Below, piece by piece: positions 10,676-63,878 of a stretch of 64,000 bases of DNA. The DNA is from Euprymna scolopes (lineage: Eukaryota): assembly GCA_053919585.1 (NCBI GenBank), contig CM132807.1, one strand, 5' to 3'. The stretch's first letter is position 1. Each line of letters begins with the position of its first letter. The position numbers were made by a program, and so were the translations under genes. Below the pieces are notes generated by a model, which ran no database searches, was not told where the DNA came from, and worked only from the letters and a program-made list of their open reading frames with translations.

Positions 10676-10819
10676 AACAAATAGTTAATAAAACATGTTT
10701 AAAACATATTACATAAGGTTGAGATTACTTTAAAAATATTAATTCTTTAATATTTATAATATACTTTAGTTTGCCCATCTTGGATCATTTTTGTAAGTTT
10801 ACTTGTAATTTTTATTTTT

Positions 10820-10873: not shown

Positions 10874-11309
10874 ATGTGTGTGTGCGTGTGTGTGTGTGAT
10901 TACTTTATTTAAACACATGAATTAAGAAGATATAATTTTATGCGTAAATTGTTAGTATTTACTCCAACTGTGCTCAATACACAGGTAAAGCTAGGTAGTA
11001 AGTAATACACAGAATATTCCGCATTTCATTCTCGTGGAAATTCGTCATGCTTATTCCTGTATGCTTACGTAAAAATGGATCGGTGTTATTGCTTCATGCA
11101 ATACAATGAATTGGGGTATCCAAATGTCTAATAAGATCGAGTACTCCTTCTATTGTGGCAGATAATGCTTTACAAGTAATTTACAGAATATCCGTCTTAG
11201 TCTCTGACCGGCCTGAAATGCACAAAATTCATTAACTGTAAAATCCAAAATACTGAACAGCTTTCTACTATATTTTCGTTTAATAAGCCTAACATTTTTC
11301 TTACATGGG

Positions 11310-13409
11310 CGTCACCACTTATCAAGGCCGATAGGCCACTCAAGGATAAGGGTTAAAGAGTGTAGAGTAGTCAACAGGTCAATGAAGTAATCGATATTAA
11401 TGGAAGTTCTATAAATTTGTTAATTTAAGTGGAACGGCCCATCAGAAACTTGTTCACGTTGAACTTGAAGACAACCATATTATAGACAGCTGGAAAGCAG
11501 GAAAACGGAAGACAATTCCACAGGCGTGCAGTTCTAAGAAAGACGCTTTGATCATGGAATCTATGTTTAGGTTTAGGTACAGATAAAGAGTGGGGAAAAT
11601 TATTGATAATGTTTTCAGCTAGTCTAGTGTTTCTTGTGAAAGTTTGGCGAGGGGGCGATTGAAGCTCAGTCGAACACTTTCCATCAAATAACGATAAAGC
11701 AGAGACAAACTCGCAACATCTCTTCTGTGAGATAGAGGTTGCAGCGAAGAGAAAAGGACATCTCCCACCAGGCCACGAAGTCTATTTTGAACCCTATCAA
11801 GGCAGGACAAGTATTTTCTAGCAGCTGCTGCCCATATGTGGCAACAGTATTCCATCCTTGGAAATATCTGGCTCTTATATAGATAGAGAATTGCATCAGC
11901 AGTGAGATATCTACTTGATCGATAGAAGGATCCGACCATTTTTCCAGCGGCCTTGGCAACAGATTTGATGTACGTATTCCATTTAAGATAAGGAGTAAAG
12001 TCAAGCCAAGAAGCCTGTCAAAACTTGAGGCCTCCCCAAGACGAGAGCCATTCATTTTAATTGATGCCAGATGGAGATCAGAACGTTGATGATGTAAAGA
12101 TAGAGGCTTGGTTTTAGATGCATTAAAAGTAACCAACCACTCCCTTCCCCATTGTACAACGTGATAAAGATCAGAGAGGAGAGAATCGGAGAGAACTTGG
12201 TCGTTTACTGTCTTAGATGAGCTACCATAGATGGCAGTGTCGTCAGCAAAAAATGTCTACGAATGAGGTAAGGTTGTGATTTGGAAGATCATTAATGTAG
12301 ATCAGGAAAATAGTTGGGCCCAGGATGGACCCCTGAGGGACTCCAGCATTTATACTGTTTCTGATTTTTTTCCCATCAACTACTTCTCTTATGAACCTAT
12401 CAGAGAGAAATGATTTAATAATTGAGAAGACATTTCCAGCTATACCATAGCTGGAGATCTTGTGAAGTAAACCATTATGCCATACCCTATCAAAGGCCTT
12501 GGATATGTCAAGATCAATTGCCCTAGAAAGGTTGCCTCTGTCGAGAGATTCGCTAATCCTATGAGATATAACTGTAAGCACATCTGCTGTAGATCTAGCA
12601 GAACGGAAACCATATCGTGTGTCACTAAGAAGGTTATTTTTGCTGAGATGGTTGATTACTTCTGTATTGAACACATATTCCAGCAACTTACTCATGACGC
12701 ACAGGAGACTTATTGGCCTGTACTGAGAGGGGGATGAACGATAACCTGAATTCTTTAATACAGGGCATGCAAATGAGATTTTCCAGGGTGATGGGAAGCA
12801 ATTTTCCTTAGGACAACGTTTAAACAGTTTTGTAAGTATGGGTGCTAGTTCTGGATGAAGTTTTTTGAGTACTATAATTGAAATACCGTCAGGGCCGGTT
12901 GCTTTACTAGAATCAAGGTTTTTTATTAGCTTGGCAACATCACATACTGATATTTGTATATCACATAGTGTGTTTTCTGATACAGGAGGAAATATTGGGG
13001 GTTGGCGGCCTTGGTCGCAAAGCGTAGAATCGGCTGCAAAGTTCTTGGCAAAGAGTTTGGCTTTGTCTGATGCTGACGAGATTAACTCAGGTTCATTGAT
13101 GATAGTTGGGATAGAGCACACGCTTTTGTTCAGGATTATGTTTGCAATTTTCCAAAACTGGTGGGAACCAAGCCGCTGCTCAGCTACTTTGGACTTGACG
13201 GACTGACTATACAACTATCTTGCGTTCTTTATTACTTTCTTACAATGGTTGCTGGCAGCCATGAAAGCGACTTTAGTTTCCATACATCTATTACGTTTGA
13301 AGCAGTGGAAAAGGTGATTTCTGTGCGCAATAGCAGCAGCACATTCTGGAGAAAACCATGGCTAGCTGTTAGGTTTTTGCATGAGGATAAAACGCGGAAT
13401 ATTCTGTGT
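11310..13409 (-). mobile_element. CR1-group (CR1/L2-like) LINE, ORF2 reverse transcriptase pseudogene plus 3' UTR
   Basis: ORFs 12243-13214, 11684-12136 and 11619-11939 carry KATGPDGI, YRPISLL, YGFRSARST, DISKAFDRVWH, GVPQGSILGP, a frameshifted FADD and MEYCCHIW. The 5' end runs into an N block. Confidence 0.93.
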
Positions 13410-21300: not shown

Positions 21301-21640
21301 TTCTTTTTGGATTTTTTTATATTTCCCGCTAACGAATTGCAGGAGTGCAACCGGTCTTCCTGTTTTTCTAGTTTTTTTATTTTGTTTTCTGATATTTTTG
21401 CTTTATTATCTGCTGCTCTCTTATTAATAGGGTCAACTGTTCATTTTGAGGCCGGTGACTTTCTTGCTGTACTTTGAATAATTCTCTTATCACTTTGGAG
21501 AATTATTCCATGTTTATATAATAATGTATATGCACAATGTATACGTTTTCATTTGTGTAAGCCACAAATATAAGTTGAACAAAAAAACAATTGAACGAAT
21601 TACGTCTTTTTTTATTTCATGTCTTGATTTTGACATCCGT

Positions 21641-21923
21641 GGTTTTCTTCAGTCTTGACAGACTATAGATGCCCACTATAAAGGTGCCTGCGCGTGAGAT
21701 TTGTGTTGAAAAGTTCCTCAATCTCCAACTACGCCTCTCCTGAGTCAATATTGAGTGGCAAGTTGAGAAACAGAACGACTGGAAACAATGCCGAGATGAG
21801 CGGAAAGCACATACAGCGCCTAGAATTCCCAAATATTAACCCATCTGGTACTAACGAGGCTCAAGGCTGATTAACTTCGGTGATCTGGCGAGAACCGGTG
21901 TGTCACCGTGATGATGCCGTATA
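21641..21923 (-). mobile_element. 5S rRNA-derived SINE (SINE3-type) flanked by a 12-bp direct repeat
   Basis: The head 21923-21804 aligns end to end with eukaryotic 5S rRNA and is followed by a ~160-nt unrelated body. TTTGACATCCGT occurs at both 21629-21640 and 21924-21935 (probable TSD). Confidence 0.8.
21804..21923 (-). pseudogene. Degenerate full-length 5S rRNA sequence (head of the SINE)
   Basis: TACGGCATCATCACGGTGACACACCGGTTCTCGCCAGATCACCGAAGTTAATCAGCCTTGAGCCTCGTTAGTACCAGATGGGTTAATATTTGGGAATTCTAGGCGCTGTATGTGCTTT is colinear with the 5S consensus, including box A and box C remnants. It has many substitutions and no T4 terminator directly after it. Confidence 0.85.
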
Positions 21924-22421
21924 TTTGACATCCGTAAGTCAGGGATAATCAACTTTTGTTATTCTTTTATATTTTGTGAACAGAGTATGTCAGTGATTTT
22001 ATTCTCTCTACACGTATGAATTATTCCACTTCTAACACAATAAACGAGTTTTTTTAGAACTTCTTTTTAGAAATTGTTCATATTTACCTGGTTACGTATT
22101 TTTATGACATCACTTCCAATTTCGATTTATTATCAGAGGTAAATTCGTCAATATAGAATTGAACAAAGAAAAACAAAATTATTTTAAGTTCGTTACATTT
22201 TCAAAGTTAAAACGGTGTATTTGTGTGTATTTTAATTCCATGCATGTTTTCTTAGTCGAACTAGTTTTAAGTCGGACTTGTATCGTTGCGGATAACTGTT
22301 TTTTTCTTTCAATTAAAGTAACCGTTTTTAGTGTAAAGGCGTATTTATTTTTTTTCTTAGAGAACATTTCTTAATGCTAAGTCGTCTTTTAACGACTTTT
22401 AAATATCATAAAGCTCTGAAT

Positions 22422-29261: not shown

Positions 29262-31299
29262 GCATATGTTATTTTTCTTTTATTAATATTAACTCAGATT
29301 CGCACCACCCCCTATTCTATTACGAATACCTGGTCTTCAATAACAATCGAAGCAGAATTATATATGTTATCGGCAAATTACTATTTCTCTCTCGGGGGAT
29401 ATTTGTTGTTACTGACATTTATATTCCTCAGATGAATCATACTTATATTTCTGCTGCAATCCTAAAGTATTACTTACCTTATAAGTTTTGAGAATTGTAT
29501 CAAAAAGATTCTTAAAGAAAAAATTTAAGGCCGAACGGGTTTTATTGTAAGTGTAAACTATTTGTCCGTCAGTAGTTTTTAAAAAGAAAAAAATAATCTG
29601 TCCTTTTATTTAATGAGGACGGGCTCTACAATAGAAAGATTCACTGTGATTTGCGTGACGAAATATGTATCATTTGAAATGGTGTATACTACCGAATTTC
29701 GAAAGAGAATGATGTAAAACATTGTTTTCATGTAATAAAATAATTATAAAACATTAATTGTTATTTGCTATTTATAATGCAAGCATGTAACATAATATTT
29801 TCAATAATATGACAAAACTTATATCAGTTGTTTTATTTTTTTATGTTTTAGAGATACGAGTTGTATCATCCAGAACTGGCAAAACTATCCATTACTTAAA
29901 TAACAGTTCATGGATAGTATATATAGACATCATATAAAAGCCGGCCTTACTGTAAAGACACGCAATAATCTTCTGTACATCACTTCCCGCCACATCTCCT
30001 GAAGTAAACAGCATTACTATTATTAAACTCTTACAATATGGGTGACCATTTGAAAATACTAAATGGCGTATATCATTTCGCCTCATCAAGCTAGACATAC
30101 TGATTATGGACCGCATGTGTGTTGTATACGTTTACTTAAATGGAAGGCAGGAATCTCGCAACGTTTTAAAAATACAACAAAAATGCATTACTGGCTTTTC
30201 GCTGGTGAATCATGCAGGAAAGCCGTTCAGTTTTAATGTGCCTCACATACAATGCGACATTGCAAATAAATATTATCGAACTATATTCTAAATACGCAAG
30301 GTACAAGAAAGAAAATGAACGCATTACGCAGTGTAATTTATATATAATTACTTAATTTAAAGTTAGTTTAAGAATGACTACCCTGTTTGACAAGAACAGC
30401 TATTATAGATTGTTTACATTCTTTTTCAATGACCTTGCTTTTGGAATCCTATTCTTATCGATTGCATGGTTTATATATCCTTTATTTTTTCCAGCAGTGA
30501 ATCAACGTGCATAGAGTATTCATTTTATATTATTCCATTAATATTCAGATAGAATAATTATTTAAGAAAAAAAGGATGCAATCTGACGAGGATGCTACTC
30601 TTTTGAGTAACGGATGCCTCTTCATGAAATCAATATTCACATATATTTTTCAATGTTTTCAATTAATTTCTAGTATAATGGACCCTGTAGGCTGTTACAA
30701 CTAACACTTAAAAATTATTGAAAGTTTATAAGAATGTTTTTTATTTCCTCGACTTAAAGTAGATATTATGCAATTGAATGGAATAATATTTCCATACTGG
30801 CAAATAATATATACGTTCAAGAAAGTATTATTCGTAAATTCTGTATATCGTGAAGAGTTTCAGAAAACACTAATAGGAATTCTCACTGTCGAAATTTGCT
30901 AAACAATGAAAAGTTCTTTCATAAATTATTCATTGCATGTTTGTTATATTGAAAATATAATTCCTAACGCTTTTTTTCCAAACTGTTAAATTTATGACGA
31001 ATGTAAAACACATCGTTGCACGCGAACACATTTTAATTTCAGATTTTTCTATTGAATTCATGAAAAGCAATTTAAGGATATATTGCTCGTCAGAAAACAA
31101 TCGGCGAATACAAAAGAATGGAATAAACATATGTTATATTAATATAAGAAAATATGTGATATATCTACAAGATATAAGTCTTGTTAAGGAAGAGTTTTCT
31201 TCCAAAAATTTAGTCCGTGGAGTCTCCATAATAGTACGATGTGCAATCCTTCGCTGATCTAATCGGGAAAATTAAAAAATATTCATTAATTTTAAATTT

Positions 31300-62550: not shown

Positions 62551-63878
62551 TAGGCACCGCCAAAACTGGGGGGGGCAGGTAAGTACTTTTTTTACGGACC
62601 GTCTTTTTAAAAATCTACCAAAAATCAGGTAATTATCCGATCAATACGAAATTTTCAGCGATTATTAAGAGAAGAATGAACTTTATAACGGTGTACTTAT
62701 TTTTCATAAACGATATTTATATATACATATATTTTTGCTTACAAAACCCCCCTTGTTTTGAAGTGGGAACAAATATGCTTAAAATAATCATCTGAAACTG
62801 AACACAACATATTGTGTTGTTGTAAGGGACAGAAATATAGATTTAAAAAAATTGTTTGCATACCTTATTTTGACATCTGAATATCAGAACTTCGATTGTG
62901 TTTAATTATCCCGCTTTTGAGTTTTGAAGTGTGAAATTCGGTGAATATGTTAAGTAAAATAATTAATTTAAGTTAAGCAAAACAATTTTTTTAAATATTT
63001 ATACGAAAAAAGCCATCTTAAAATCTTTGATAAATAAATTAACATTTTTTTTAGCGAGCCGAATAATGCATGACCATTATTAAACAGGGCATGCTTTGAA
63101 GAATCGATACCAAAAAAAAAAAATTCGATAAATATTGTGCCCTTTGTGTTAAAAATATCACCATTTTTTTCGATCCCGTTTAAAAACGTTTGCCGCCTTT
63201 CGACTACGGTGGACCAAACGCGCTGAAATAATTTTTTTTTTATTCTGCTTTAAATTGCCCCCCCCCCCATTTTGGGGAGCCTGTCCCCCACACACATAAA
63301 CATTAAAAACCAAACTCATACAAATGGTCACCCATCTGGTACTGGCCAGCCTCAGCTTAATAATACATTGAAATTTTCGTCACTGAAAAATAATTTTTTT
63401 TGCCTGTTTGGTCTTCCATAGTTTGCTTCTTATCAAACGCAAACGTAAACAGTGTCGATCTAGACTCTAGATCGACGCGAAATAATCGGTTACATATATG
63501 AATAAGTGGAATTATTTGAAATCCAGGTACTTATATTATAATATTTTTGCATATTCTCTTAGAAAATAATCCTAAATCTTAGTTAGACAATAAATAAATA
63601 AATTAATTATTTCAAAAACTTTTTTTTAAATATTTATGAACGTTTTTTGTGCAAGACAAAAAATGTCAATTGTTAACTGTTTGGGAAAATTTAACATTTA
63701 AAATTTAATTAAAAATAGTAGAAAAAGTTTTACATTATTCTGCTAACTATATGATAAAATTCAGGGTTTTATCTTTCTGGAAAAAAAAAGTTACTCAGAA
63801 ATAATGGATTTTAATAAATGTAATTTCGTTTTAAAACCAACAACAACTTGATTTTGCGGCCATTTTTGGCGGTGCCTA
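62551..63878. mobile_element. Non-autonomous hAT-type DNA transposon (15-bp perfect TIR, 8-bp TSD)
   Basis: TAGGCACCGCCAAAA at 62551 and TTTTGGCGGTGCCTA ending at 63878. TGTTTATA is duplicated at 62543-62550 and 63879-63886. No transposase ORF. Confidence 0.88.
63321..63360 (-). pseudogene. Short 5S rRNA / 5S-SINE fragment (box C region)
   Basis: ggtcacccatctggtactggccag...gcttaa resembles the reverse complement of 5S and shares cccatctggtact with the 21.8-kb SINE head. Confidence 0.5.

What the first reader, a model, noticed from the sequence alone, without database searches (positions are those of the whole stretch)
21629..21935. 5S rRNA-headed SINE whose tail stops in a half hammerhead-like motif
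Seen: a full-length degenerate 5S sequence fused to a ~160-nt body and bounded by a 12-bp direct repeat. There is no poly-A or simple-repeat tail. On the minus strand the body ends GTCAAGA-CTGAAGA-AAACC|ACGGATGT, where CTGAAGA fits the hammerhead CUGANGA box and AACCAC-GGAT-GT would be the start of a stem II that is cut off inside the duplicated target. Known: 5S-derived SINEs (SINE3) are much rarer than tRNA SINEs and usually borrow a LINE 3' end, while Penelope-like elements carry minimal hammerheads in their terminal repeats. The tail does not resemble the RTE or CR1 3' ends in this window. Inference: this may be a Pol III/5S-driven non-autonomous element mobilised by a Penelope-like RT, with priming by microhomology. 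That would be an uncommon SINE-partner pairing.
Basis: partly seen in the sequence, partly recalled or inferred. Interest (0 to 1): 0.72.

Follow-up and report, generated by a model that had tools for sequence, protein, structure and literature searches.

The report
Old 5S-headed SINE copy, no ribozyme
This stretch is a decayed copy of a very abundant short jumping element whose front end is copied from the 5S ribosomal RNA gene. Its supposed "half hammerhead" end is only the element's ordinary last bases followed by duplicated target DNA. The family's real oddity is that it lands mostly in (TA)n microsatellites.

Summary
Window 21641-21924 (minus strand) is a full-length 5S-rRNA-headed SINE flanked by an exact 12-bp direct repeat. 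It belongs to a family of about 6,800 copies in this 5.9-Gb genome.

The hammerhead reading fails.
- The letters ACGGATGT, read as the start of stem II, are target DNA or microhomology.
- All other copies stop at ...GAAGCC plus 0-15 extra bases, mostly TT or a T-run.
- The family consensus reads CTGAAGG, which does not fit CUGANGA, and no GAAA box follows.
- Rfam finds no hammerhead even at E<=10.

No LINE or Penelope-like element (PLE) shares the SINE's last 15 or 24 nt or its whole body. Two PLE 3' regions align with the tail no better than shuffled sequence.

New finding: the family inserts preferentially into (TA)n microsatellites. In an unbiased sample, 62% of copies have them on both sides, and so do all 11 of the youngest copies, against a 3-4% background. 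The genome's abundant young PLE families show the same signature, as do two other non-coding repeats. Two abundant LINE families are poly(A)-tailed instead.

A PLE partner therefore stays plausible (about 35-40%) on target-site evidence, not ribozyme evidence. The scan has noted other 5S-SINE families in this genome before.

The parts
21924..21935 (.). Target-site duplication, copy next to the 5S head (TTTGACATCCGT on the + strand). Base 21924 is shared with the Rfam 5S match.
   Evidence: Exact 12-nt direct repeat. Family alignments end here.
21808..21924 (-). 5S rRNA-derived head, full length and decayed. The internal promoter region (box A, intermediate element, box C) lies at roughly 21831-21877.
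   Evidence: Rfam RF00001, 56.3 bits, model 1-120. Alignment to the genome's own 5S gene from the C18 cluster.
21665..21807 (-). Family-specific non-5S body. This copy lacks 9 nt that the young subfamily has.
   Evidence: Alignment of 30 copies. No match to any LINE or PLE tested.
21651..21664 (-). Terminal hairpin AGTCT-GTCA-AGACT, kept in all copies.
   Evidence: Read from the sequence. Predicted in the minimum-free-energy folds of both the young copy and the window copy.
21641..21650 (-). Last 10 nt of the element, GAAGAAAACC (family: GAAGGAAGCC).
21629..21640 (.). Target-site duplication, copy next to the tail.
   Evidence: The older subfamily's end ...GCC-AC(G) makes the first 2-3 nt ambiguous.

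Best explanation
Window 21641-21924 (minus strand) is an old member, about 85% identical to young copies, of a high-copy 5S rRNA-derived SINE (SINE3 type).

Anatomy of the family:
- a roughly 119-nt 5S head that keeps helix I and, in young copies, the box A / box C internal Pol III promoter but has lost the 5S terminator;
- a roughly 175-nt unique body;
- a 14-nt terminal hairpin followed by GAAGGAAGCC;
- a very short variable end: TT or a T-run in young copies, A(C/T) in older ones.

Inferred mechanism: Pol III transcribes source copies and terminates in a T-run just after ...GCC, giving an oligo(U) 3' end. A reverse transcriptase supplied in trans then copies the RNA by target-primed reverse transcription at a staggered nick. 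This leaves 8-15-bp target duplications, occasional 5' truncation down to tail-only stubs, and 1-4 nt of junction microhomology.

The nick is placed with strong preference in (TA)n or TA-rich sequence. There is no ribozyme.

The SINE borrows no recognisable LINE or PLE 3' end. The enzyme is therefore not identified. The best candidate (about 35-40%) is the genome's abundant young C-terminal GIY-YIG Penelope-like elements, which show the same (TA)n signature. An unidentified LINE is about equally likely.
For: Shown:
- 5S head and its alignment to the true 5S gene, 98 of 128 aligned positions, with boxes kept in young copies.
- About 6,800 copies.
- Of 30 randomly placed tail matches, 29 are SINE copies at 80-98% identity and 3-4 of them are 5' truncated.
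- Unique-site TSDs of 8-15 bp in L017, L028, L030, L015, L022, L072, L087, L063, L035, L011 and the window copy.
- End heterogeneity in 100 unbiased junctions: about 62 start TT, about 27 start A, about 12 have T>=5.
- Tail-only stubs with unrelated upstream DNA.
- TA-like microsatellites on both sides in 18 of 29 unbiased copies and on at least one side in 24 of 29, against a 2.8-4.1% background. All 11 copies at >=95% identity have them on both sides.
- The 3' end of family PLE-A has 7,219 matches. Of the first 100, about 48 continue into the next tandem unit and nearly all the rest run straight into (TA)n. PLE-B does the same.
- Two further non-coding families sit in (TA)n.
- Two abundant LINE families end in poly(A).
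- No other element shares the last 24 nt, the last 15 nt or the whole body.

Inferred: Pol III transcription, the oligo(U) end and the identity of the reverse transcriptase.
Against: - No transcript ends were seen. Poly(A) RNA-seq reads from the family lie on both strands, and 83-90% run on into unlike flanks, which looks like read-through.
- There is no sequence homology between the SINE and the PLE families sampled.
- SINE copies do not form the head-to-tail tandems typical of PLEs: 0 tail-to-head joints within 30 nt.
- TA bias is weaker for the SINE (about 56% of 3' junctions) than for PLE-A (about 96%), and weaker still in old copies such as this one, which sits in unique DNA.
- Only two LINE and two PLE families were examined in a 5.9-Gb genome, so a (TA)n-preferring LINE cannot be excluded.
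Confidence: 0.85

Rival explanations
1. One reading: the SINE tail is a truncated hammerhead taken from a Penelope-like terminal repeat. Full-length copies would continue into stem II and a GAAA box.
For: The window copy reads CTGAAGA. The PLE 3' regions of this genome contain a hammerhead-like stretch, CTTGAAGAAGCC...GGGCGAAAC, that resembles the SINE's last 12 nt.
Against: About 190 inspected copies end at ...GAAGCC. The continuation in the window is the TSD. The family consensus CTGAAGG breaks the CUGANGA box, and no GAAA follows. Rfam finds no hammerhead at E<=10 in the window or at E<=1 in the PLE. The local alignment is not better than shuffles, p 0.13-0.97.
Confidence: 0.03
2. A conventional LINE-dependent SINE. 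The hairpin plus short tail is the recognition site of a stringent LINE (CR1, L2 or RTE type) that prefers TA-rich nick sites. That LINE would be rare, extinct or too diverged to be caught here.
For: A hairpin about 10 nt upstream of a short repeat or T-rich end, 8-15-bp TSDs and 5' truncation are typical of LINE-driven SINEs. Other 5S SINEs (CoeSINE5, HaSE3, SINE-1_Pmo) use RTE parts (PMC5786205).
Against: Exhaustive pattern scans found no non-SINE sequence that shares the last 24 nt (42 hits), the last 15 nt (48 hits against 16 in the control) or the body start. The hits were SINE indel variants or truncated stubs. The two abundant LINE families sampled are poly(A)-tailed and unrelated. The youngest copies are 98-99% alike, so the partner should still be active and present.
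Confidence: 0.35
3. The (TA)n flanks are not a target preference. They grew after insertion from the TA-rich ends of the element (head ATATA..., junction ...TTATAT).
For: The element starts with ATATA, and many 3' junctions carry a short TATA. SINE ends are known seeds of microsatellites (general knowledge).
Against: The youngest copies have the strongest association (11 of 11 on both sides) and the oldest the weakest (8 of 29), the opposite of growth with age. Arrays extend beyond 40 nt on both sides of copies 98-99% identical to each other. Unrelated families (PLE-A, PLE-B, X, Y) show the same flanks.
Confidence: 0.07

Closest known systems
SINE3 / 5S rRNA-derived SINEs (zebrafish SINE3; CoeSINE5, HaSE3, SINE-1_Pmo; Kapitonov and Jurka 2003 as cited in PMC5786205)
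   Same: A 5S-derived head with an internal Pol III promoter, an unrelated body, dispersed copies with TSDs, and thousands of copies.
   Different: The described families carry LINE-derived 3' parts (RTE, or L2 through the Deu domain). This one shares no 3' end with any element found, ends in GCC plus a short T-rich stub, and prefers (TA)n targets.
5S-derived loci of decapodiform cephalopods (about 24,000 loci reported in the giant squid, PMC6962438)
   Same: Massive amplification of 5S-like sequences, suspected there to be SINEs. This genome has several 5S-headed families with different bodies (earlier scan notes).
   Different: That paper gives only a count. No family structure, ends, targets or partner were described. 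That my genome is a cephalopod is an inference, not shown.
Penelope-like elements with microsatellite insertion bias (Naiad in (TA)n; Neptune; PMC8557442) and animal retrozymes as their non-autonomous derivatives (bioRxiv 10.64898/2026.07.22.740005)
   Same: Insertion bias for (TA)n, no poly(A), and variable short junction sequence. This genome's own PLE families end ...CATAT directly in (TA)n.
   Different: The SINE has no hammerhead, no pLTR homology and no tandem arrays. It has a Pol III head, which retrozymes lack. A Pol III SINE driven by a PLE has not been described in the papers I could search.

Membership tests
SINE3 (5S rRNA-derived SINE) | The 5' part is homologous to 5S rRNA over its whole length. 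| tested here: met
   Rfam RF00001, 56.3 bits in the window copy and 72-83 bits in young copies. 98 of 128 aligned positions match the genome's own 5S gene.
SINE3 (5S rRNA-derived SINE) | The internal Pol III control region (box A, intermediate element, box C) is retained. | tested here: met
   Young copies keep AAGTTAAGCAACG and GATGGGTGACC..TTGGGAA as in the true 5S gene. The window copy has several substitutions there, so it is probably inactive.
SINE3 (5S rRNA-derived SINE) | Short, non-coding, dispersed, high copy number, flanked by TSDs. | tested here: met
   294 nt, about 6,800 copies spread over all large contigs, TSDs of 8-15 bp.
SINE3 (5S rRNA-derived SINE) | The 3' end is shared with a partner LINE (usual, not obligatory). 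| tested here: not met
   No non-SINE sequence shares the last 15 or 24 nt or the body. There is no similarity to two LINE families.
SINE3 (5S rRNA-derived SINE) | Transcribed by Pol III as a discrete RNA. | tested here: inconclusive
   Only poly(A) RNA-seq was available. Reads are mostly read-through, with no end pile-ups.
Hammerhead ribozyme | A CUGANGA box, stem II, a GAAA box and a cleavage triplet in a three-way junction. | tested here: not met
   The family consensus is CTGAAGG and the element ends 5 nt later. There is no GAAA. No Rfam hammerhead match at E<=10.
Non-autonomous PLE derivative (retrozyme-like) | Sequence homology to a PLE terminal repeat. | tested here: not met
   nhmmer finds no hit, and local alignment gives p 0.13-0.97 against the PLE-A and PLE-B 3' regions. 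Only two PLE families were sampled.
Non-autonomous PLE derivative (retrozyme-like) | Tandem or partial-tandem insertions. | tested here: not met
   0 tail-to-head joints within 30 nt. Only rare tandem tail stubs were seen (L075, L080).
Non-autonomous PLE derivative (retrozyme-like) | The same target preference as the autonomous PLE. | tested here: met
   (TA)n flanks in 62-100% of SINE copies and in about 96% of PLE-A termini, against a 3-4% background.

The most novel reading that the evidence does not exclude
This 5S-headed Pol III SINE, together with at least two other non-coding (TA)n-dwelling repeat families, is mobilised by Penelope-like elements. The link would not be a shared 3' sequence or a ribozyme. 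It would be the PLE endonuclease/RT complex nicking (TA)n and priming on short U/UA-rich RNA ends. That would be the first SINE-PLE partnership, with a relaxed, microsatellite-guided template choice.
Probability: 0.35. Interest if true: 0.7.

Novelty: new member of a known kind. Interest (0 to 1): 0.38.

Why it matters
By itself the locus is an ordinary decayed SINE copy. The family is still useful for three reasons. First, it documents a well-defined 5S-derived SINE in a mollusc-type genome, where only counts of 5S-like loci had been published. Second, it lacks any borrowed LINE tail. Third, it shares a sharp (TA)n insertion bias with the genome's young Penelope-like elements. PLE integration is poorly understood and has no in-vitro system (PMC8557442). 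A short, abundant, easily tagged passenger would give a practical handle on it, if the partnership is real.

Tried and rejected
- Hammerhead: Rfam scans at gathering score and at E<=10 on the locus, and at E<=1 on a complete PLE unit, found none.
- Partner hunt by 'tail plus not-SINE-upstream' IUPAC patterns at three anchor points found only SINE indel variants and truncated stubs.
- BLAST and nhmmer of the SINE against the window, 97 loci, one LINE and four PLE 3' regions gave nothing beyond SINE copies and other 5S heads.
- The resemblance of CTGAAGGAAGCC(TTCATA) to the PLE's TTGAAGAAGCC(CGCATA), and of GTATCCA motifs, was tested against shuffles and dropped.
- Tail-to-head tandems: none.
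- Poly(A) RNA-seq gave no transcript ends.
- A control using a second 5S-SINE family failed. The copy I had was 3'-truncated, so the pattern landed inside that family's body.
- Organism names were coded. 'Mollusc' comes from earlier scan notes and 'cephalopod' is my inference.
- The N run in the window was not touched.

Full report
**Observation**

The minus strand of window 21808-21924 matches Rfam 5S_rRNA over the whole model, at 56.3 bits against a gathering score of 38. It is the only Rfam family that reaches its gathering score in the 64-kb window.

An exact 12-nt direct repeat, TTTGACATCCGT, lies at 21629-21640 and 21924-21935.

A whole-genome search with the 307-nt stretch gave 6,646 first-look candidates. 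All 39 other scored hits align to query positions 9-17 through 295-298, that is, from the head to the base just before the downstream repeat. The element is therefore 21641-21924 on the minus strand, and the repeat is a target-site duplication.

The window is G000:C25:47,368,001-47,432,000 of a 5.9-Gb assembly.

**Family anatomy**

I aligned 30 copies with 40-nt flanks and tabulated about 86 copies. The family has four parts:
- a roughly 119-nt 5S head;
- a roughly 175-nt body with no match to anything else I hold;
- a terminal hairpin, AGTCT-GTCA-AGACT;
- the ending GAAGGAAGCC.

After GCC come 0-15 variable bases and then the TSD. The 24-nt tail occurs 6,806 times at <=2 mismatches and never in the reversed control.

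Of 30 exact-tail matches taken in genomic order along contig 1, 29 are SINE copies at 80-98% identity to a young copy. Three or four of them are 5' truncated, and one is a 24-nt tail-only stub.

The window copy is about 85% identical to young copies. It lacks 9 nt of the body and ends GAAGAAAACC. It is an old member.

**The head**

The genuine 5S rDNA cluster lies on contig 18 at 127.4-128.2 Mb and scores about 115 bits.

Aligned to one of these genes, the young SINE head matches 98 of 128 aligned positions. It keeps the box A and box C regions and has lost the gene's terminator, so it runs on into the body. Helix I is still paired in the Rfam alignment although its first bases changed from GCTT to ATAT.

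The window copy has several substitutions in the promoter boxes and is probably dead.

**The hammerhead claim**

No other copy continues that way.

The family consensus is CTGAAGG, which breaks the CUGANGA box, and the element stops 5 nt later without any GAAA. Rfam with permissive filters finds no hammerhead at E<=10 in 21500-22050.

**Search for a partner that shares the 3' end**

Pattern scans of the whole genome are exhaustive. I therefore anchored on SINE sequence and required the adjoining bases to differ from the SINE.

| Anchor | Hits | What they were |
|---|---|---|
| Last 24 nt | 42 | SINE copies with small deletions, or tail-only stubs with unrelated upstream DNA |
| Last 15 nt | 48 (16 in the control) | Almost all SINE copies with a 1-nt indel in the hairpin |
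| First 25 nt of the body, preceded by non-5S sequence | 353 | Indel variants, or copies truncated at that point against (TA)n |

An nhmmer profile of 64 full-length copies found nothing else in the window or in 97 loci.

Two abundant LINE families end in poly(A) and are unrelated to the SINE. One lies in the window with its 3' end at about 11295 on the minus strand and has 16,601 candidates. The other encodes a 1,231-aa ORF.

No LINE-derived tail was found.

**Target preference**

In the unbiased set of 29 copies, 18 have (TA)n or (TRTG)n on both sides and 24 on at least one side. (TA)>=5 makes up 2.8% of the window and 4.1% of distal flanks.

| Identity to the young copy | TA-like repeat on both sides |
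|---|---|
| >=95% | 11 of 11 |
| 90-95% | 5 of 16 |
| <90% | 8 of 29 |

This trend argues against microsatellites growing from the element's ends after insertion.

I scored 100 further 3' junctions printed by a pattern scan by eye:
- about 56 run into such repeats within 18 nt;
- about 62 begin TT;
- about 27 begin A(C/T), the older subfamily, to which the window copy belongs;
- about 12 have a run of five or more T.

In unique targets the TSDs are 8-15 bp, and 8 of about 20 start with TA.

I read the TT or T-run as the remnant of a Pol III oligo(U) end, and the TA as nick-site preference or microhomology. Both readings are inferences.

**Penelope-like elements**

A GIY-YIG scan found 15,396 candidates. 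They are dominated by one young family with 804-808-aa ORFs, often in tandem or inverted pairs.

One fetched unit (L092) encodes RT plus a C-terminal GIY-YIG domain with the CCHH cysteines. Its array ends ...TTTCATAT directly in (TA)n.

The 22-nt 3' end occurs 7,219 times. Of the first 100 places, about 48 continue into the next tandem unit and essentially all the others run into (TA)n. A second PLE family (L094) ends ...CATCATAT in (TA)n as well.

Both carry a hammerhead-like stretch that Rfam does not call.

Their 3' regions do not align with the SINE tail better than shuffled tails, p 0.13-0.97. SINE copies do not form tail-to-head tandems.

Two more non-coding families live in (TA)n:
- a hairpin repeat with a CTGATGA motif (L019:1816-2456; pieces in 6 of 90 SINE loci);
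- a roughly 735-nt element (window about 51630-52362; 6,723 candidates).

An earlier scan note (s1-295607) had already described a hairpin repeat that lives in (TA)n.

**Interpretation**

The core claim is secure: an old copy of an abundant SINE3-type family, retroposed by target-primed reverse transcription, with no ribozyme.

The enzyme is not identified. The only RT-encoding elements I found with the SINE's target signature are PLEs. The abundant LINEs sampled do not have it, and nobody shares the SINE's tail.

I therefore put a PLE partner at about 35-40% and an unseen LINE at about 35%, and leave the rest open.

Evidence against the PLE reading:
- there is no homology to the PLE families sampled;
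- there are no tandem insertions;
- the TA bias is weaker than that of the PLE itself;
- the window copy lies in unique DNA;

**RNA**

Four poly(A) RNA-seq runs of the same species label gave 600-2,300 family reads each, on both strands. Between 83% and 90% run on into unlike flanks, and there are no start or end pile-ups. This is read-through transcription and says nothing about Pol III transcripts.

**What is known**

5S-derived SINEs are established, and several use RTE parts (PMC5786205). About 24,000 5S-derived loci were counted in the giant squid without further analysis (PMC6962438). (TA)n bias is described for Naiad PLEs and suspected for Neptune (PMC8557442). Animal retrozymes are proposed PLE passengers (bioRxiv 10.64898/2026.07.22.740005).

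My searches found no paper that describes a Pol III SINE driven by a PLE.

Earlier notes of this scan list dozens of 5S-SINE sightings in this genome. One follow-up covers a different family of at least 4,200 copies (s1-295712). The scan has therefore met this kind of element before on other DNA.

**Verdict**

The hammerhead interpretation is refuted, and the PLE partnership stays open with new circumstantial support. This is a new member of a known kind, of modest interest.

Noticed in passing
L092 (G000:C5:35825300-35829400, element on the minus strand); L093; genome-wide pattern: A very young, abundant Penelope-like family. It has an 806-aa ORF with RT plus C-terminal GIY-YIG and tandem units of 2,888 nt. 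Its 3' end 22-mer occurs 7,219 times. The fixed 3' terminus ...TTTCATAT is followed by (TA)n in nearly every terminal copy.
   Followed up: partly
L094 (G000:C23:116599270-116600570): A second PLE family. Its 3' region is homologous to the first, including a hammerhead-like CTTGAAAAAGCC...GGCGAAAGG stretch that Rfam does not call. It also ends ...CATCATAT in a long (TA)n/(TRTG)n array.
   Followed up: partly
L019:1816-2456; pieces at window 10709-10817 and 50502-50605; also L005, L052, L058, L061, L080: A hairpin (fold-back) repeat of about 640 nt with roughly 160-nt inverted arms that contain a CTGATGA motif. It is bounded by (TA)n on both sides and is frequent next to SINE copies. It is probably the '(TA)n hairpin repeat' of an earlier scan note.
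   Followed up: partly
window about 51630-52362 (+): A non-coding element of about 735 nt with three internal repeats. It ends ...GGGTACTTTTGCTAG and is flanked by (TA)n on both sides here and in other copies. It has 6,723 first-look candidates genome-wide.
   Followed up: partly
window about 11295-13300 (-): The 3' part of an abundant LINE (16,601 candidates; RVT_1 ORF at 12243-13214). Its A-rich, poly(A)-type tail ends at about 11295. Copies of the same family's 3' end are in L057 and L084.
   Followed up: partly
L010:1077-1318, L063:445-; L015:3088-3201; L069:2123-2236; window 29976-30087 (+) and 63321-63357 (-): Other 5S-headed SINE families with quite different bodies. One has at least 4,500 matches to an internal 18-mer. 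The window also holds two weak 5S-like remnants. 5S heads have been recombined with several bodies in this genome.
   Followed up: partly
L061:1938-2656: A short tandem array with a period of about 185-215 nt. Each unit joins the first 119 nt of the hairpin repeat to a 40-nt piece of the 5S head. It looks like a junction of two repeats that was amplified into a mini-satellite.
   Followed up: no
L057, L067, L077, L088, L089 (about 1500-1535); L075 and L080: Tail-only SINE insertions of 22-26 nt with unrelated upstream DNA. In L075 and L080 two tail units stand in tandem, separated by 4-20 nt. This suggests extreme 5' truncation and occasional template switching.
   Followed up: partly
G000:C18:127.42-128.24 Mb (L097 is one unit): The genuine 5S rDNA cluster, with dozens of genes at about 115 bits. 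The rough first-look count of 5S-like loci genome-wide is about 277,000.
   Followed up: no
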